From: Vitrella brassicaformis CCMP3155
Taxonomy: Eukaryota; Protista; Chromerida
Reading direction: 5' to 3'
Length of the DNA: 64,000 nt
Assembly (NCBI GenBank): GCA_001179505.1
Contig: CDMY01000571.1
Coordinates: 62,001-126,000, forward strand
Positions 28,001-35,000 of the stretch are shown here, piece after piece. Every line of letters begins with the position of its first letter. The stretch's first letter is position 1. Below the pieces are notes generated by a model. It was not told where the DNA came from and searched no databases. It worked only from the letters and a program-made list of their open reading frames with translations. Position numbers and translations under genes: made by a program.

Positions 28001-29563
28001 CTCCACCGTCTGCCCGTTCCACCCTGCCCACATGACAACAGACCAGAGATAAGAACTTCTTTCTCCACCGTCTCCATCCATAACACTTACCCATCGGGAT
28101 GAAGGCATGAGCAGAACACGTCGCGAACAATGGGCACACACTGGCAGAGGGCACCGGCGAGTGCACCCCACGCGTGGGCGTTTCTGGGGCCCGGCCAAGG
28201 TCGTCCTCACCGGCCAGACTGTGTTGGGTGAAGAGGCGCTGTGTTGGGTGATAATATGATGTGTAATTGGTCTGACGATGTCGAAAGGCAATTGCGGCTT
28301 GATGCGGCGAATTACAAAAGAAAGAGGAAACCGAAAAAGGCTCCGCGTCTCCAGCCTCCGTTCTCGACAGGATTTACTGGAGAGATTGCTCTGTGTCTTG
28401 CCTCCTCTTGCCCTCTCCCCGTTCCGTCCCTCCTCCTGCACCTGCCTGCATCACAAGAAGCCAAAGAGCAGAAGACGAGAGCACTCACGCAGTTGGCGTG
28501 AGGTGGAAGGAAGGCATCTGTCGCCAGTTTCCGTACCGCGATACAGCTTCCTCACCGCGAATCCCGTACACATGAGGTGGCTCATCAATGAAGTCCTGAT
28601 GCAGGACTCGTCAGAAAGCAATGGGCACACAGAAGGGCAGCGGTGGACGAGTGCGGGCGCTTGGGGAGCCGGCCAAGGTCGTCAGTGCCGGCCAAGACTG
28701 CTGCCGTCGGCCAGGCTGAGCGATGCCGTGTTCGGGTGATGAGACTAATAGCCACTGGTGGTCAGCAGGCCAGAGAGATGACCAGACGCTGTAGAATGGC
28801 GATCGTCGGCGAGTTGCGGCTTGACGCGAAAACAAACAGAAAAAAAGCCGTCTCCGTCTCCGAATCTCGCCGGGATTCATTTGGTTCTAACAGCCGCTGC
28901 GTGCAATGGGGTGTGACACGTACATCGATGTATTGAGGAGAAAAATCCCTTGCAACACCGAGAAACAGTCAATAAAGCGATCATGAATCAATAAAGCCAC
29001 AGAGAAAGTTCTCCCCTATACACACATGCCCGCCCATAGAATGAATGCAACCAAGTGCGACCACCACTGTGTGTGCGTCGCTCACGCGCCCGTTCGCACC
29101 TGAGCACGCCATGCATACCCACATCGTCTGTCTGTCTGTCTCTCTGCGACAACAAATACAATGTGCATCCTTCATCATCCATTCATCGCTCCACAAACTT
29201 AGTGCCTCCCTGTCTGTCTGTCCATGCACTAGTGATAAAGAGACACGTACATGCACCATGCACCCACACAGGCCAGGCGCAGGCATGCCTCACCTGTGCC
29301 ACCGGTGGCAGCACGTCTAGATATCAGCCATCCATCCATCCATCCATCCACAAACCCATAAAGCGCACCAAATCAGCACGGTAGGTTGATAGATGTCAAA
29401 AAACGACTTGCTGCCACCCACACGCACCTGAACAAAACGGTGACCGACCTCCCCACCCACGCTGCCACTCAATCACACGCACCGAGGGAATACGCCATCG
29501 TGTGCTGCGTGTACCAATTCACCCATCCGCCATGGCTCCATCCATCCGCCATCCAAATGACAG

Positions 29564-31796
29564 TCACCAGAATAGTGGCCATTTCCTCCGTGGCGACAGG
29601 TTGTTGATGAGCAGGCCGACGACGCCCAGCACCACCCAGCCGATGAAGAAGGAGAACAACCACATCGACAGCTCCACCTTGGGCGTCGCCGCCACAAAAG
29701 CCACGGCCGCACTCGCCGCTGGCGGACAGGTGATGCCTGTAGGTGAAAAGCATACCCGGGTTGGCGTGTCTGTGTCCGTGTCTTCTGTGAGTACCGAAGA
29801 AGGCCATTCCTGCGATGATGATAGTCATGGTGAGGCTCACGCCCAGCCAGTAGGGCAAGAAGGCTGGCAAGACAAACGTGTCACCTGATTCGATTTCACG
29901 TGCGCATCAAAACACCCACACACATGACATGAGTGGTGGACAAACCGACATACGACCTCACGAGCTGAGCGTGTCTGTCAGTGTGCGCACCTTCGTCACC
30001 GGTAAGCAGCACTTCCAGCGGTTCGTCGCGATGCGGCCCGATGCCGTGGGTGAAGAAGGCAAACACCGACGCAACCGTCAAGGCATACCTGCACACACAC
30101 ACACACACACATATTTCTGTCTGTCTGTGTGTCTGTCTGTGTTGAGGACACCCAAACACTTACAGTGTTGAAAGCAGCAGGATCCGTGGCTGGCCAAATG
30201 GAGACGACGGCGCCGTGAAATACATGGTCGCCTGCGAGCCCGCATCAGCAGACAGGTACACACATCCACCTGTGTCCCTCCCTCGCAGCCTGTGTCAGTC
30301 TCACCATGGCTCCAAACGGCCCAATCAGGTGGAAGGAGCTCTCGTCGATGAACGCCCCCTTGATGACGGCCGTCAGCAGGCTGAACGTGACGAAGACCTC
30401 CAGTGCAGCCAGCAGGCAGTGCCCCCCATCCAGCGGCCTCGCCCGCTGCCCCTTGCCGCCCCGCCATTTCTTGATGTATCGCCGGCAGTAGGCCCGCGGG
30501 TGTGCCGACAGCTTCCTGTACCGCTCCCTGATGTAGTCCGCCCAGCTCAGCTGCTGGGTCCGCGCCTCCCAGCTGAGCAGCCGCTGTGCCGACTTCGCTG
30601 ACTCATCCAGCGTGGGTTTTCTGGTCGGGGGGACAGTAGATGTGGAGGGTGCGGGCGCGGGCAGGGCGGTGGGGTGCTGCGCCTCCTGCTCCCGCAGCTC
30701 TTGCAGCCTCCTCGTGTGCCAGACGATGTGGTGCAGCTTCCGCCACCCATAAGACACCACTGCCGCCCGATGCCGCCTCAGTGCCGTCCTGGCAGCGCAC
30801 ATCCGCAGCTCCCACTGGAGGGCTCGCAGGGCGGTGTCGAGGTAGGCCTCGACCATGGGGCTCTTGACGCCCACTTTGTCCTCGTCGACGCGCCACTCCT
30901 TGCGGGTGTAGAAGACGAACACGGCCACGAGGGCCCGCTTGTCCTCAAACACGGGGAGGCTGTCGTAGTGGAAGTGGCTGGCCATCAGCAGCGGGCTGTT
31001 TGCCGCCATCTCCCGCTCCAGCTGCTCCATCCCCGAGATGCGCGGACCACTGGTGTTGTTGTTTGACCCCGCCGTAACGCCCAGCCGCCTGCGCATCGAG
31101 AAGATGGGGACGGCCAGGCTTGTGTGGAAGAGCTCGCCCGCGAGAGTGTCCATGGGCGTGGAGGGGTTCTCGGGGTCATCGAACAGCCTGTCGAGTATGC
31201 ACCACTCCCTGGTGCCCTGCTGCCATGCCCGGCCGGCGGGGCCCTGGCCAACGGTGAGGGTGACGTCTTTGTCCTGCGGCATTGACGCGAAGGCCTGGAG
31301 CTTCTCTGGGTCGTCCCCAGCGCCGCTGTTGTGCCGGATGACCACACTGTTGGGTGCCTGCCGCAACGCACCGGGCTGCTCATGATCGGGCTGCCACATC
31401 TCGCCGTAGATAAAGCCGCAGTCGTGCAGGATATTCTCAAGCTGCACCTGCAGGCACCGTTGAACCTGATCACACACACACACACACAGGCACGAACACA
31501 AGTATAGTGTCTGAGTGGTGAGACCACCCCAGCGCGTCTACCTGTGTCACGTCATCTTTGCCGACCGCCTCATTGGACGCGCAGCCGAGAGAGGGGTGTG
31601 AGGGCAGCCTTGGGCTGGAGGGCGGATCACGCGGCGAGTCGACTTCGTTGACTGTGAGCACAAAGGGCTGAGATGGCGGTGGCGGGATGTCGGGGTCAGA
31701 CAGCAGGGGCGTCGTGATGCTGCCACTGGACAAGGTCGACGCGCTGCCTGTGGAGAAGGCCACTGACGCAAATTCCGTCGTTCGGCTTCTGAGCAT
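29564..31796 (-). CDS. GAF-like domain fused to an HPP-family membrane domain
   Basis: N-terminal part has GFIYGEMW, VGQGPAGRAWQQGTREW, FHTSLAVPI and LVAVFVFY (GAF-like). Spliced C-terminal exons give GPFGAM-ATMYFTAPSSPFGQPR, GITCPPAASAA and LLINNLSPRRKWPLFW (HPP family). Stop 29564-29566. Confidence 0.8.
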
Positions 31797-32021
31797 GAGG
31801 ACTGTGTGACAAAATGGGCGGATCTGAGCATTCAGTGATCCGTCCCACGCCCTCGGTGACCTGCGTCTGCCGTTGAAACACCTGAAGTGCGTCACATTCG
31901 TTTTGACGCCGATCCGAGCTCGGGCAAGGCGCGAAACGCTGCTGCCCCTCAAGCTCGCATTTCGAGAGGAAGAAAAGTAGAGAAGGGAGGGCGTCATAGG
32001 GGTGCCTGAGGCCGCCAGGCC

Positions 32022-35000
32022 ATGGATCCAGCTGAAAACCCCGCAGGTAGCGAAGTACAAAGCGCCTTTCGACAATTTGCCGCGTTTGACCGCTGCGTGC
32101 TCTTTGTTGCTCAGGAGCCGGGCAGGGTGGCGGCCCGTCGCTGCTCGAGCGCCTGCGAGAGACGCTCGCCAAGATCCACTCGGTGAGACCAAGTATTTCA
32201 TTTCAGGCAAGGCGAATGCATGTCTGTGCCGTCAGGTTGCGTCATGTGTAGAGGAGGCCGAGAAGGTCATCACAGATACCATTAATGCAGGTGTCAGGCA
32301 GAGAAAACACCGGGCACGTCATGCCATTGTGTATGCGTGTGAGCATGTGTGTGTGTGTGTATGCAGGAGTGTGTGTTGCCGGCCGGCCGTCTGTCGGCTC
32401 TCCAGACCACTGTGAGCGATGCCCAGACGTCACTCAATGACGCTGCGGCTCAGCTGTCCACTCTATCGCCCCCACACACAGACGCCGACACACACGTATG
32501 GGCGGCCCCCGGCACTTGCACACGGATGTTGGTGACTGACTTCCATTGCTGTGTGTTTGTGCTCATTCAGCGATTTGATGGTGACGGCAAGTTGTTTCGG
32601 TGCATTCATCGGGCCAGCAGGTCGGTCAGTTCGAATGAGACCGCAAAGGCGGCACAGCAAACAAGGGCAGTAAGTGCATCCCTCCTTTGCCAATCACCAC
32701 ACAAGGGGGCTCGCTCACACAAGGATGTCCTTTCTGTTGATGTGACGGATGTGTCTCAGGTGTCCACAGGCGATGGGAAACGTGCACGTGTGACCACAGG
32801 CCCTCCGGCTGCTGCTGCTGCTGCTGCCGCTGGTGCTGCTGCTGGAGGTCCGCACATACAGCAACGCACCCACACGCTCACACAGATCGACCATCGTATT
32901 CTGTGTCGTCTTCAGGTGGCTCGGCTGGTGTAGCCGGTGCTGTGGCAGAGGAAGTGGAGAAGAAGACCACCACTATCGCTAAGGTAGACGACCTCCCCCA
33001 GACGCCACACACGCACGCACCTGTCGGTCACCGTGCCCATTCTCCTGCTGTATGTCAAAAGTACGGCCGCCCGTGTCTGCCGGGTCTGCCTGAGGCCGTC
33101 ATGGGCTACATGGGCTCCTTCGTCACCACCAAGACGGCAATTCGGCTGTCCAAGGTCAACAAGGAGACCCACCAGAAGGCCACCGACGAGACATTCGGGG
33201 TATTCCGCTTCTTCTCTGTCGACACACATGAGAGCCACGCATACGCCAAGATCAAGAAACTCCAAGATGTCAAACGTCTGGTGAGGGAAGGGCAGCAAAG
33301 GGAATGCACTCACACCCTTCTCTCTGTATGGTGCAGGGGAAGATCCACACAGCGCGCGTTGATCTGCACGCACCGAGTGTGTTGCCCTGTGTGGCACAGT
33401 GCCTTGAGGCGTCCAGGGCGACTCTGACGGAGCTCCGCTGCTTCTACGTGTCGTCCTCCTTCAACTCGCCGACCCCTGCCGCCCCTGGCGCCCCGGGCAT
33501 GTGCATTGACTTCCCGAAGCTGACGCACATAGAGGCCTTGTCAGTGGAGTGGCTCAAATACTTCAGGTACGTATACCCGAACCGAGAAGGGCATGTGGGT
33601 ATCCATCCGTTGACGCCGTTTCTCTGTCGCAGCACGCGGCGGTGGCGGTTTCCCGCCCTGACGACCCTGGAAATCGGCCATGAAGGCCATCAGGCGCCCA
33701 ATTCCGTCGTGCAGCTGCTCAAGGCTTCGCCCAACATTCGACATCTCTCTTTGAGCCGGGCCAACCTGCACGAGGACAGCACATGGGCCGGCTTCATCGC
33801 GGCCCTCAAGAACTGCCCTCACATCACCACCATCACCGGCCTGGAGCTGGAAATCGACAGCACCGACCGCGTCAGCCAGCTGATGGATGCTCTGAGCCAC
33901 TGGAAGAAGCCGGAGAACAAAGGTGAGGTTGTCTCCACGCCGACGGCCTGATGCGGCATCATGCTGGTCCTGTCCTGTCATGTGCTGCATGGTCTCAGAT
34001 GTGCGTAAGCAGCTGGTTCTCTGCTCGCGAGACCCGCTCATCAACTGGGAGTACGGCCAGGAGGGGCCGGCCCCAGCCGACATCAACAAGTGGGCGGCCG
34101 AGGTCGGCTGCGACATCTGCTGGTCTGCCTACTCGGTGACGGTCGACTGCAGCTTCACCCCCGAGACTGCCCACCCCGCACCCGACAACGTCATTGGCCA
34201 GGTCACAAAGGAGCTGGCAGAAGGGGCGCAGGTGGTGAGGGAGGGAGGGAGGGAGGGAGGGAGGGAGGACAGGTGTGAGGCCGCTCCATCAGACAAGGAA
34301 TCCGCCCTTCTCTGTCTGTCTGAGTGCTTTGTGTTTCAGGTTGAGGTGAATCTCGGCGGCACACCTCTGCACGAGAGTTGGCGTGACAAGCTCGTCTTCC
34401 CGAACGCCGAGTCGCTCAGGATACGCGCTGAGCAACCAGCAGTGCTGGATAGCATCCCAGGCTGGCTCGTCGACGACGAGGGGGCAGTGAGCCGGCGCTT
34501 CCCGGCAGTCGAGAGTCTGGATGTTTCTCTGGATTCCCCCACCTTCGCTGACATGCCTGCTGCCCCCAGCAAGCTCAGCGTGCTGTTCGGGGGCCTGACC
34601 TCAGTCAGAGAGCTCAGTTTCAGAAGTTTGCATAGCCTAGCTGTCGCCTGCGAGGTCCTGTCCTATCTCTCTGTCAAACAGCTAGAGCGTGTCAGTTTTG
34701 ACGAGCAAGCTGAGATGGAATCCACCGAGTGGCCTGCTGCTGTGCCTGAGCAGTGGGCCCTCAGCTGCCCCCACATAGACAGCCTGTGGGTAGGCCGACT
34801 AGCCAGCAAGGTAGCCGTGCGGTCGTTCATCAAGCTGATTTTGACCCTGCGGCCAGCACAGGCAAAGCTCTATGCGTGTCTGCCTTCTGACGAGTTGGAG
34901 GGCCCTGACGGGCTCACAGCCATCCGCGCCTTCGCGTGGGAGTGCTATGAGCAAGTGCAGGCACACTACTCGATGAAAGAAGACAGTCGACGTGCCGGTT

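What the first reader, a model, noticed from the sequence alone, without database searches (positions are those of the whole stretch)
29564..31796. GAF-HPP fusion: candidate nitrite/nitrate transceptor
Seen: one gene joins a GAF-like region (GEMW..GQGPAGRAW..EW..SLAVPI..VAVFVFY) to a complete HPP-family membrane domain. Known: HPP proteins include the cyanobacterial NitM and chloroplast NITR2 nitrite transporters. The GxPGRA/V.....EW GAF-like motif resembles the N-terminus of plant NIN-like proteins, which sense nitrate. Inference: a ligand-gated nitrite transporter or membrane nitrogen sensor in a single polypeptide. I cannot tell whether this architecture is already annotated elsewhere.
Basis: partly seen in the sequence, partly recalled or inferred. 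Interest (0 to 1): 0.8.

Follow-up and report, generated by a model that had tools for sequence, protein, structure and literature searches.

The report
GAF sensor fused to HPP membrane domain
One expressed gene of the alga Vitrella brassicaformis joins a cytoplasmic GAF-type sensor domain to an HPP-family membrane domain, a rare pairing also found in cryptophyte algae; its suggested link to nitrite or nitrate is untested, and the Vitrella copies lack both signature histidines of the HPP family.

Summary
Window 31796-29564 (minus strand) is a six-exon gene of Vitrella brassicaformis. It encodes a public 614-aa protein annotated only as "HPP transmembrane region domain-containing". All the GAF-like motifs and the first HPP helix lie in one 1161-nt exon. 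Spliced contigs from three studies carry all six exons as one mRNA, so the fusion is real.

The C-terminus is a clear HPP domain (Pfam 71 bits, cut-off 27). The N-terminal domain misses Pfam's GAF threshold. It is still a GAF fold by profile search, hhalign (97.6%), language-model features and an AlphaFold model (pLDDT 79.5; Z up to 13.5 against solved GAF domains).

The same fusion occurs in a Vitrella paralogue, in the cryptophytes Guillardia and Hemiselmis, and in a few uncultured protists, and almost nowhere else among 1.84 billion protein representatives.

- NitM is an FNT protein, not HPP.
- The NLP likeness is that of a broad GAF subgroup. NreA, the nitrate-binding GAF, scores no better than other GAFs.
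- Both Vitrella copies replace the two family histidines (H to T, HPP to CPP).

The best reading is a GAF-regulated HPP membrane protein of unknown ligand and substrate. The scan earlier noted GAF-bZIP fusions elsewhere in this genome.

The parts
29564..31796 (-). Whole coding span of the GAF-HPP gene. It has six exons and encodes 614 aa plus a stop, equal to the public protein P0001 of Vitrella brassicaformis.
   Evidence: Spliced contigs cover it.
31542..31796 (-). Exon 1 (residues 1-85). It is a Ser/Pro-rich, probably disordered N-terminus with no hydrophobic signal peptide. It holds a 'TTPLL' motif that recurs at the N-termini of related HPP proteins.
   Evidence: The motif is seen in P0002, P0025, P0027 and P0009.
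30305..31465 (-). Exon 2 (residues 86-472). This single exon holds the whole GAF-like domain, the linker, the first HPP transmembrane helix and the GPFGAM block.
30767..31465 (-). GAF-fold domain (residues about 86-318).
   Evidence: Pfam GAF_2 is below threshold. The profile search hits bacterial GAFs at E 1e-6. hhalign gives 97.6%. All ten best named Atlas clusters are GAF. The AlphaFold model has pLDDT 79.5. Foldseek and VIA match solved GAF domains at Z up to 13.5.
30935..31093 (-). Vitrella-specific insertion of about 50 residues (about 210-262) between the last two GAF strands. It is absent from cryptophyte and bacterial relatives.
   Evidence: Alignment A9. pLDDT is low there.
30425..30766 (-). 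Basic linker (residues 319-432, inside a stretch with 28 K/R against 10 D/E). It continues the C-terminal GAF helix. It holds a conserved R-x-V-V-x-x-G-W-R/K motif (30734-30775) and the juxtamembrane Y-x-x-K-W-R/K-G motif (30458-30478).
29576..30421 (-). HPP membrane domain (residues 434-611, spread over exons 2-6). It has four hydrophobic helices at residues 435-453, 489-507, 541-559 and 583-601.
   Evidence: Pfam PF04982 scores 71.2 bits. Hydropathy is and the alignment is A7.
30166..30168 (-). Codon of T494, at the position of the conserved G-x-H histidine of HPP proteins.
   Evidence: 21 of 22 relatives have H, and both Vitrella paralogues have T. The transcript contigs show no differing letters.
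29726..29728 (-). Codon of C561. The name-giving HPP motif reads CPP here.
   Evidence: 19 of 22 relatives have H and 3 have N, while both Vitrella paralogues have C.
31466..31541 (-). Intron 1 (GT-AG, rich in CA/GT repeats).
30232..30304 (-). Intron 2 (GT-AG).
30089..30163 (-). Intron 3 (GT-AG, contains a microsatellite).
29885..29990 (-). Intron 4 (GT-AG).
29737..29794 (-). Intron 5 (GT-AG).
31797..31873 (-). 5' untranslated region covered by the transcript contigs. It contains an upstream ATG at 31831.

Best explanation
**What it is.** The gene encodes a 614-aa membrane protein made of four parts:
- a disordered N-terminus;
- a cytoplasmic GAF-fold domain of the 'GxGLPGRxW...W...DPE' subgroup, the subgroup that also holds bacterial tandem GAFs and the NLP and MYC N-terminal domains;
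- a basic helical linker that continues the last GAF helix;
- a four-helix HPP membrane domain whose two ends both face the cytoplasm.

**Where it occurs.** It belongs to a small eukaryotic family of GAF-linker-HPP proteins. The family is found in the chromerid Vitrella (two paralogues), in cryptophytes and in a few uncultured protists.

**How it most likely works (inferred).** The GAF domain is the regulatory input. It would respond to a small cytoplasmic ligand or a partner protein. Through the conserved linker helix and juxtamembrane motif it would then control what the HPP domain does in the membrane. By analogy with AtNITR2;1, that is most plausibly passage of a small anion such as nitrite. 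In logic this resembles other membrane transport domains that carry cytoplasmic sensor domains. My recollection, not tested here, is that many bacterial HPP proteins carry CBS pairs.

**The Vitrella twist.** In the Vitrella lineage the HPP domain evolved fast and lost both family histidines before the gene duplicated. It has been conserved since. Its membrane activity is therefore probably altered, either in substrate or mechanism or by reduction to a signalling anchor.

**Shown versus inferred.** Shown here: the gene structure, the single mRNA, both domains, the fold, the taxonomic spread and the substitutions. Inferred: the topology, the regulation, the ligand and the substrate.
For: - **One exon, one mRNA.**
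- **HPP domain.** Pfam gives 71.2 bits for P0001 and 90.4 for P0002.
- **GAF homology by sequence.** A profile of the two paralogues was run against 1.84 billion representatives. Besides the paralogues it finds only bacterial GAF proteins and eukaryotic relatives. A profile of the eukaryotic family alone against a bacterial GAF profile gives 97.6% and E 3e-12. All ten best named Atlas clusters are GAF.
- **GAF fold.** The AlphaFold model has pLDDT 79.5 and pTM 0.76. It matches solved GAF domains at Z 11.3-13.5, with rmsd 2.7-3.8 A over 130-153 residues.
- **Same architecture elsewhere.** It occurs in Guillardia theta XP_005826486 (P0013), in P0009 and P0021, in a Hemiselmis tepida fragment (P0022) and in the environmental genomic contig L082.
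- **Conserved linker and juxtamembrane motifs.**
- **Topology.** The segment before the first helix has 12 K/R against 1 D/E. The loop between helices 2 and 3 has 1 against 6. The tail has 3 against 0. This fits an N-in, C-in arrangement.
- **The model's last helix runs into the linker.**
- **Vitrella HPP domains.** They sit on a long stem (1.42 changes per column), inside the group that holds all fusion-type rows, yet are 62% identical to each other.
- **Histidine replacements.** They are shared by both paralogues.
Against: - No experiment or expression condition links the gene to any ligand or substrate.
- Pfam GAF models stay under threshold.
- The good AlphaFold model came from an alignment made mostly of bacterial GAF domains. 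A shallower alignment gave pLDDT 47. The fold evidence is therefore not independent of the sequence homology.
- The top structural matches include the MYC3 and EGL3 N-terminal domains, which bind proteins rather than small ligands.
- Loss of both family histidines may mean that the Vitrella HPP domain does not transport at all.
- No neighbouring long ORF in 18-44 kb matches any Pfam family, so genomic context gives no help.
Confidence: 0.55

Rival explanations
1. The GAF domain binds nitrate or nitrite, as NreA and NLP7 do. It thereby gates nitrite transport by the HPP domain, or reports nitrogen status. The protein would be a single-chain 'transceptor'.
For: AtNITR2;1 is an HPP protein with nitrite transport activity, and HPP genes rise under nitrite limitation in Kuenenia (PMC4137279 and PMC7438415). 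NreA is a GAF protein that binds nitrate, and NLP7 is reported as a nitrate sensor with an NreA-like pocket (PMC9731675). NreA chains are among the structural matches at Z 11.5-12.5. The nearest bacterial relatives also match Pfam GAF_NLP.
Against: NreA scores no better than cNMP-, haem- or protein-binding GAFs. GAF_NLP does not hit the protein. NreA reaches only E 0.5 against a mixed profile, and nothing at all is hit by the family-only profile. The pocket residues were not compared. Both HPP histidines are replaced in the Vitrella copies. There is no plastid-type leader. No nitrogen-assimilation gene was recognised nearby.
Confidence: 0.15
2. The GAF-like domain is not a small-ligand sensor. 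It is a protein-binding or dimerisation module, like the MYC3 and EGL3 N-terminal domains. It would tether or regulate the HPP domain through a partner protein.
For: The best Foldseek E-values and joint-top VIA Z-scores go to EGL3 and MYC3 N-terminal domains, which bind JAZ and MYB partners. The bacterial relatives also match bHLH-MYC_N. Several family members carry very long inserts in the N-terminal half of the domain, or seem to lack that half (P0013, P0006, P0009). That is hard to reconcile with a fixed ligand pocket.
Against: The Z-scores tie with those of ligand-binding GAFs. The invariant G..G..W...W...DPE...LF...P block is conserved from bacteria to these algae, which suggests a conserved site. 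No partner is known.
Confidence: 0.2
3. The Vitrella copies no longer transport anything. After losing both family histidines, the HPP domain would serve only as a membrane anchor or signal-passing module for the GAF domain. The cryptophyte orthologues, which keep GxH and HPP, would remain transporters.
For: T494 and C561 replace histidines that 21 of 22 and 19 of 22 relatives keep. The Vitrella pair has a long stem branch. Its Pfam scores are lower than those of typical members, 71-90 against 110-172 bits.
Against: The other family blocks are kept: AP.SP..QPR, PPAA and NNL..RR..P.FW. The two paralogues are 62% identical in this domain, so the membrane domain is under constraint. Three other HPP proteins have N at the second position, so that histidine is not absolutely required by the family. 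The role of the histidines has not been tested, as far as I could find.
Confidence: 0.2
4. The fusion is an artefact of gene prediction or assembly, and two separate genes were joined.
For: None was found.
Against: The GAF domain and the first HPP helix share one uninterrupted exon. Single spliced contigs from separate studies span all exons. A paralogue and orthologues in other species have the same architecture.
Confidence: 0.01

Closest known systems
AtNITR2;1 and NITR2;2 and their cyanobacterial homologue (HPP family, PF04982), reported nitrite transporters of the chloroplast inner envelope (Maeda et al. 2014, as cited in PMC4137279 and PMC13170786)
   Same: The membrane domain family is the same. 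It has four helices, the AP.SP..QPR block, the PP(A/G)(A/G) block, and the NN...R.YP..W tail.
   Different: Those proteins are HPP-only and plastid-targeted. The Vitrella protein carries a 430-residue cytoplasmic N-terminal extension with a GAF domain and has no signal-peptide-like leader. It reads T and C at the two family histidines.
Guillardia theta XP_005826486 (P0013), the Hemiselmis tepida HPP protein (P0022), and environmental P0009, P0021 and L082
   Same: They have the same GAF-like core, linker motif, K-W-K/R-G juxtamembrane motif and HPP architecture. They are the true family of this gene.
   Different: They keep GxH and HPP. They lack the Vitrella insertion before the last GAF strand. 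Several carry long inserts in the N-terminal half of the GAF domain, or seem to lack that half. Identity to the Vitrella protein is only about 20-30%.
Bacterial tandem GAF proteins with the GxGLPGRVW motif, for example P0010 (three GAFs plus an adenylate/guanylate cyclase domain) and P0003. The genome-contig scan confirmed 564 related stretches.
   Same: They are the closest recognisable relatives of the N-terminal domain, at E 1e-6 and hhalign 97.6%. The order of secondary-structure elements is the same.
   Different: In the examples checked, the GAF domains stand in front of cyclase or kinase outputs (P0010, P0004), not an HPP domain. None of them is fused to HPP.
Plant NLP N-terminal GAF-like domain (Pfam PF22922) and the MYC and EGL3 N-terminal domain (PF14215)
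   Same: They belong to the same broad GAF subgroup, as judged through the bacterial intermediates. The G.PGR...(E)W and (A/G).P(I/V)(F) motifs are shared. MYC3 and EGL3 are joint-top structural matches.
   Different: Neither Pfam model gives a significant direct match. The Vitrella protein has no RWP-RK, PB1 or bHLH domain. It is a membrane protein, not a transcription factor.
NreA, the staphylococcal nitrate-binding GAF protein (PDB 4IUK, 6IZK)
   Same: It shares the GAF fold, at Z 11.5-12.5 with rmsd about 3 A over about 134-140 residues.
   Different: The match is no better than for other GAFs. Sequence similarity is not significant. The nitrate-pocket residues were not compared.

Membership tests
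HPP family (Pfam PF04982, TM_HPP) | Match to the family profile above the curated cut-off. | tested here: met
   71.2 bits against 27.2, over residues 434-611 and profile positions 8-157 of 157. The paralogue scores 90.4 bits.
HPP family (Pfam PF04982, TM_HPP) | Four transmembrane helices. | tested here: met
   Four hydrophobic 19-residue segments lie at 435-453, 489-507, 541-559 and 583-601. This is a simple hydropathy scan, not a dedicated predictor.
HPP family (Pfam PF04982, TM_HPP) | The name-giving His-Pro-Pro motif. | tested here: not met
   It reads C561-P-P in both Vitrella paralogues. 19 of 22 relatives have H and 3 have N. The two prolines are kept.
HPP family (Pfam PF04982, TM_HPP) | The conserved G-x-H histidine in the second helix. 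| tested here: not met
   T494 stands there in both paralogues. 21 of 22 relatives have H.
HPP family (Pfam PF04982, TM_HPP) | Nitrite transport activity, known only for AtNITR2;1 and a cyanobacterial homologue. | not testable with these tools
   This needs an uptake assay or complementation of a nitrite-transport-less strain.
GAF domain (Pfam clan; PF13185 GAF_2, PF01590 GAF) | Match to a Pfam GAF profile above the curated cut-off. | tested here: not met
   GAF_2 gives 20-23 bits against a cut-off of 28.6, at E 1e-4 to 9e-4. The paralogue gives 14 bits.
GAF domain (Pfam clan; PF13185 GAF_2, PF01590 GAF) | Significant homology to bona fide GAF domains by profile methods. | tested here: met
   The profile of the two paralogues hits bacterial GAF proteins at E 1e-6 to 2e-4 in a library of 1.84 billion. 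hhalign of the family against a bacterial GAF profile gives 97.6% and E 3e-12 over 69 columns.
GAF domain (Pfam clan; PF13185 GAF_2, PF01590 GAF) | The GAF fold, an antiparallel sheet flanked by helices with N- and C-terminal helices on one face. | tested here: met
   The AlphaFold model has pLDDT 79.5. VIA gives Z 11.3-13.5 over 130-153 residues to many solved GAF domains, and all top Foldseek hits are GAF-fold. The caveat is that the alignment behind the model was mostly bacterial GAF domains.
GAF domain (Pfam clan; PF13185 GAF_2, PF01590 GAF) | Binding of a small ligand in the pocket. | not testable with these tools
   This needs binding assays on the isolated domain.
NLP-type GAF domain (Pfam PF22922, GAF_NLP) | Match to the GAF_NLP profile. 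| tested here: not met
   There is no hit at E up to 10 for P0001 and P0002, and none at E up to 1 for seven family members. Only the bacterial intermediates match it, for example P0010 at 57.8 bits.
NLP-type GAF domain (Pfam PF22922, GAF_NLP) | Company of RWP-RK and PB1 domains. | tested here: not met
   Pfam finds only TM_HPP and a weak GAF_2 match.
NreA-like nitrate receptor | Closer likeness to NreA than to other GAFs, and a conserved nitrate pocket. | tested here: inconclusive
   NreA chains score Z 11.5-12.5, tied with about 50 other GAF entries. By sequence, NreA reaches E 0.5 against the mixed profile only. The pocket residues were not compared.
   NitM is an FNT protein (PMC4390861). 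P0001 has no FNT match in Pfam.

The most novel reading that the evidence does not exclude
The GAF domain of this family would be a cytoplasmic nitrate or nitrite receptor, or a receptor for another nitrogen-status signal, that directly gates an HPP anion pathway. That would make these proteins the first single-chain, ligand-gated members of the HPP family. It would also be an algal counterpart of the NLP7 and NreA sensing principle, wired to a membrane output instead of transcription. The histidine-less Vitrella pair would then be a transporter turned receptor.
Probability: 0.12. Interest if true: 0.8.

Novelty: new variant of a known kind. Interest (0 to 1): 0.45.

Why it matters
**A handle on a poorly understood family.** I found no solved HPP structure by sequence. 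The only assayed function I found is nitrite transport by AtNITR2;1 and a cyanobacterial homologue. A natural fusion to a sensor domain says that, in some algae, the activity of an HPP domain is worth regulating from the cytoplasm.

**An experimental route.** The isolated GAF domain can be screened for ligands. Whatever it binds is a strong hint to what HPP domains handle.

**A natural experiment.** The family offers orthologues with the two family histidines (cryptophytes) and paralogues without them (Vitrella). That is a direct test of whether those residues matter.

**Domain shuffling.** The family extends the reach of the NLP/MYC-like GAF subgroup to membrane proteins. Together with the GAF-bZIP fusions noted earlier in this genome, it suggests that Vitrella has shuffled GAF inputs onto several outputs.

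**If the nitrogen link fails.** The finding would then remain a modest addition to the list of domain architectures.

Tried and rejected
1. **PDB by sequence.** N-terminal profiles made of Vitrella or eukaryotic family sequences alone gave nothing useful. Only a mixed profile that included bacterial GAFs hit GAF entries, which is circular.
2. **First AlphaFold run.** It used a 14-sequence alignment that misplaced the last strand. It gave pLDDT 47 and was discarded.
3. **Word-index protein searches.** They returned few family members. The exhaustive profile search was needed.
4. **Locus scans.** The metagenome scan that did run found one locus, L082.
5. **Other protein libraries.** NCBIfam found nothing. 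The Atlas feature search of the linker found nothing.
6. **Genomic context.** Ten long neighbouring ORFs at 17.5-42.7 kb match no Pfam family, so there is no visible nitrogen-assimilation cluster. This is a crude test in an intron-rich genome.
7. **Source paper.** Maeda et al. 2014 is not held in the library. Its content is cited second-hand from PMC4137279, PMC7438415 and PMC13170786.
8. **Gene-model artefact.** Considered and rejected.
9. **IQ-like calmodulin site.** I considered this for the linker motif R-x-VV-x-x-GW-R/K. The spacing does not fit the IQ consensus as I recall it, so I make no claim.
10. **Joined exons.** I used the public protein record P0001 and checked each exon against it separately.
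Full report
**Observation.**
The window is GC-rich eukaryotic DNA with short introns full of CA/GT and CTGT repeats. The same frame continues into '...YIKKWRGGKGQRARPLDGGHCLLAALEVFVTFSLLTAVIKGAFIDESSFHLIGPFGAM', which is the start of an HPP membrane domain. The join of the two parts therefore lies inside a single exon and does not depend on a splicing model.

**Identity of the gene.**
A word-index search with that exon returned a 614-aa protein of Vitrella brassicaformis CCMP3155 at 100% identity (P0001). UniRef names it only 'HPP transmembrane region domain-containing protein'. The search also returned a 601-aa paralogue from another contig of the same species (P0002), which is 43% identical over 595 aligned positions.

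**Gene model and expression.**
The gene has six exons: 31796-31542, 31465-30305, 30231-30164, 30088-29991, 29884-29795 and 29736-29564.
- All five introns are GT-AG.
- Each exon, translated on its own, is a substring of P0001.
- The exon lengths add up to 1845 nt, which is 614 codons plus a stop.

I laid the contigs of four public runs from three studies on 29450-31900. Spliced contigs skip all five introns. Single contigs of 2456 nt (run X6) and 2492 nt (run X7) run from beyond the stop codon to 31873 and 31838. No letters differ from the window. The runs' library type is not on record, but intron-less contigs can only come from RNA. The condition 'transcripts show two separate genes' is therefore not met.

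I used the public record P0001 and checked the exons one at a time.

**The membrane domain.**
Pfam TM_HPP (PF04982) matches residues 434-611 at 71.2 bits against a cut-off of 27.2, covering profile positions 8-157 of 157. The paralogue scores 90.4 bits.

A hydropathy scan finds four helices, at 435-453, 489-507, 541-559 and 583-601. Charge counts for the flanking segments are:

| Segment | K/R | D/E |
|---|---|---|
| Before helix 1 | 12 | 1 |
| Loop between helices 2 and 3 | 1 | 6 |
| C-terminal tail | 3 | 0 |

By the positive-inside rule this puts both ends, and so the whole N-terminal extension, on the cytoplasmic side. This is an inference. The first 60 residues hold no hydrophobic stretch that could act as a signal peptide. 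A chromerid plastid protein would, to my knowledge, be expected to have one.

**The histidines.**
I aligned the two paralogues with 22 other HPP domains.
- The family blocks are kept: AP.SP..QPR, PP(A/G)A and NNL..R.YP.FW.
- The two family histidines are not.

| Position | Vitrella (both paralogues) | The 22 other HPP domains |
|---|---|---|
| G-x-H in helix 2 | T494 | H in 21 |
| The HPP motif itself | C561 (reads CPP) | H in 19, N in 3 |

The transcript contigs show the same letters.

In a quick maximum-likelihood tree the Vitrella pair sits on a long stem of 1.42 changes per column. It lies inside a group (SH-aLRT 89) that holds every fusion-type sequence. The two paralogues are 62% identical in this domain. 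Typical HPP proteins score 110-172 bits on the Pfam model.

I read this as a burst of change before the duplication, followed by constraint. That points to altered function rather than decay.

**The N-terminal domain.**
Pfam GAF_2 matches residues 141-220 at only 20-23 bits against a cut-off of 28.6, so Pfam alone leaves the domain open. Four further lines agree on GAF.

1. *Exhaustive profile search.* A profile of the two paralogues (residues 84-345 and 95-372) was run against 1.84 billion representatives.
   - It found only 11 proteins at E up to 1e-3.
   - Apart from the paralogues, these are bacterial multi-GAF proteins at E 1e-6 to 2e-4, whose matched stretches lie in Pfam GAF_2/GAF domains, and a handful of eukaryotic relatives.
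2. *Profile against profile.* A profile of the eukaryotic family alone, compared with a profile of six bacterial GAF domains, gives 97.6% and E 3e-12 over 69 columns.
3. *Language-model features.* The ten best named Atlas clusters are all GAF, at a score of 0.93.
4. *Predicted structure.* In a 55-sequence alignment, the Vitrella-specific insertion of about 50 residues falls out as an insert and the last strand and helix align.
   - With it, AlphaFold2 gives pLDDT 79.5 and pTM 0.76. The element order is helix, two strands, helix, strand, helices, strand, insert, strand, long helix.
   - All top Foldseek hits are GAF-fold proteins.
   - VIA-align gives Z 11.3-13.5, with rmsd 2.7-3.8 A over 130-153 residues. 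The hits include the MYC3 and EGL3 N-terminal domains, PDE2A, PDE6 and PDE10A GAFs, DevS GAF-B, fRMsr and NreA.

There is a caveat on the fold evidence. The alignment behind the model is mostly bacterial GAF domains, and a shallow alignment gave pLDDT 47. The fold evidence therefore leans on the sequence homology and is not independent of it.

**Which kind of GAF.**
The bacterial relatives carry 'GxGLPGRVW...W..DV..DPNFPR'. The genome-contig scan confirmed 564 related stretches. These bacterial proteins also pass Pfam's GAF_NLP and bHLH-MYC_N models. It is a real subgroup signature, but it is not specific to NLPs.
- The Vitrella protein and its eukaryotic relatives do not themselves reach GAF_NLP, even at E 1-10.
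- They carry no RWP-RK or PB1 domain.
- NreA, the nitrate-binding GAF, is one of about 50 tied structural matches. By sequence it reaches only E 0.5 against a mixed profile.

I did not compare the pocket residues.

**A family of fusions.**
The architecture is not a Vitrella oddity. The following all join the same GAF-like core to an HPP domain:
- Guillardia theta XP_005826486 (P0013, 571 aa);
- two transcript-derived proteins from a JGI sample (P0009, 586 aa; P0021, 597 aa);
- a Hemiselmis tepida fragment (P0022);
- an environmental genomic contig with an intron (L082).

The shared core reads GEGLPGxxW...W...DDPE.P...LFHAS.A.PIFD...LVAV...Y.PHE. These relatives keep both family histidines.

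Between the two domains, all share a basic helix with 'R-(I/A)-V-V-x-x-G-W-x-(R/K)'. Just before helix 1 they share a 'Y-x-x-K-W-(K/R)-G' motif. In the model, the last GAF helix runs straight into this linker. From my own knowledge, not tested here, this is the arrangement through which GAF domains pass signals to their output domains in cyclases, phosphodiesterases and kinases.

The family is rare. The exhaustive search found nine distant hits, and the metagenome scan found one extra locus.

**Literature.**
- AtNITR2;1 is an HPP protein of the plastid inner envelope with nitrite transport activity (Km 13 uM in the NA4 strain). This is from Maeda et al. 2014 as summarised in PMC4137279. See also PMC13170786 and PMC7438415.
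- NreA binds nitrate at a Kd of 22 uM. NLP7 is reported as a nitrate sensor whose pocket mutant (HLY/AAA) loses the response (PMC9731675).
- No paper in the library holds both 'GAF domain' and 'HPP family'. By sequence, no HPP structure is in the PDB copy.

**Mechanism.**
The best-supported reading is a GAF-regulated HPP membrane protein. A cytoplasmic GAF input is coupled through a conserved helical linker to a four-helix membrane domain, which by family analogy handles a small anion. I put this at about 0.55.

The specific nitrate or nitrite transceptor idea stays possible but unsupported, at about 0.15. A protein-binding GAF, as in MYC and EGL3, is about 0.2. A transport-dead Vitrella HPP domain is also about 0.2. 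These two can each be combined with the main reading.

Genomic context gives no help. Ten long ORFs at 17.5-42.7 kb match no Pfam family.

**Verdict.**
The architecture and both domain assignments are right. The NitM premise is wrong. The NLP and nitrate link is a lead only.
- The fusion is a new variant of a known kind. The proteins are already in public databases under the HPP name, but the GAF domain is below Pfam's threshold and I found no description of the pairing.
- An earlier follow-up in this scan reported NLP/MYC-type GAF-like domains fused to bZIP modules elsewhere in this genome (s1-205532, s1-080125). I did not test those. They did not appear among the relatives of this domain.

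Noticed in passing
window 31547-31831 (minus strand): An upstream ATG at 31831 lies inside the transcript contigs, which reach 31838-31873. It opens a 94-codon ORF in another frame that runs across the main ATG at 31796. Both ORFs begin with the same nine letters, ATGCTCAGA. It may be a regulatory upstream ORF, or the main start may be reached by leaky scanning.
   Followed up: partly
P0001 residues 28-32 (window about 31701-31715, minus strand); also P0002, P0025, P0027 and P0009: A short '(T/V)PLL' motif followed by acidic residues recurs near the N-terminus of both Vitrella paralogues and of stand-alone or fused HPP proteins of the same clade. Examples are MAGVTTPLLPDD, SLETPLLLDSD and DRVPLLSNG. 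It may be a dileucine-type sorting signal. It also supports the annotated start codon.
   Followed up: no
L082:118-1093 (environmental contig Ga0209555_10091472): This is a genomic contig of an uncultured eukaryote. An intron separates the GAF-like core from the linker and first HPP helix. The database proteins P0008 and P0015 from the same kind of organism end in intron read-through, so they look like stand-alone GAF fragments but are not.
   Followed up: partly
L002-L081 (bacterial genome contigs); P0003, P0004, P0010: A very widespread bacterial GAF subtype carries the GxGLPGRVW and A(I/L)GSQ(I/V)GQF motifs, and the scan confirmed 564 related stretches. It occurs in Acidobacteriota, Nitrospirota, Planctomycetota and others. 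Examples checked stand in tandem before cyclase or kinase outputs. Pfam's plant-named models GAF_NLP and bHLH-MYC_N match it above threshold.
   Followed up: partly
window 32022-32186 (plus strand): An ATG-initiated ORF on the opposite strand starts about 150 bases beyond the 5' end of the GAF-HPP transcripts. The two may be a head-to-head gene pair sharing a short promoter region. No Pfam match was sought for it.
   Followed up: no
window 29300-29360, 30083-30145 and 31461-31501: Microsatellites, (CCAT)n, (CTGT)n and (CA/GT)n, fill the 3' flank and introns 1 and 3. The reads tool skipped the two intron stretches (30083-30145, 31461-31501) as repeats.
   Followed up: no
P0013 (Guillardia), P0006 and P0012, compared with P0009 and P0021: Family members differ greatly in the N-terminal half of the GAF-like domain. 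Some have inserts of 100-150 residues between the first and second strand. P0009 and P0021 show no recognisable first helix or strand at all. Only the core from the GxGxPG motif onward is common to all.
   Followed up: partly
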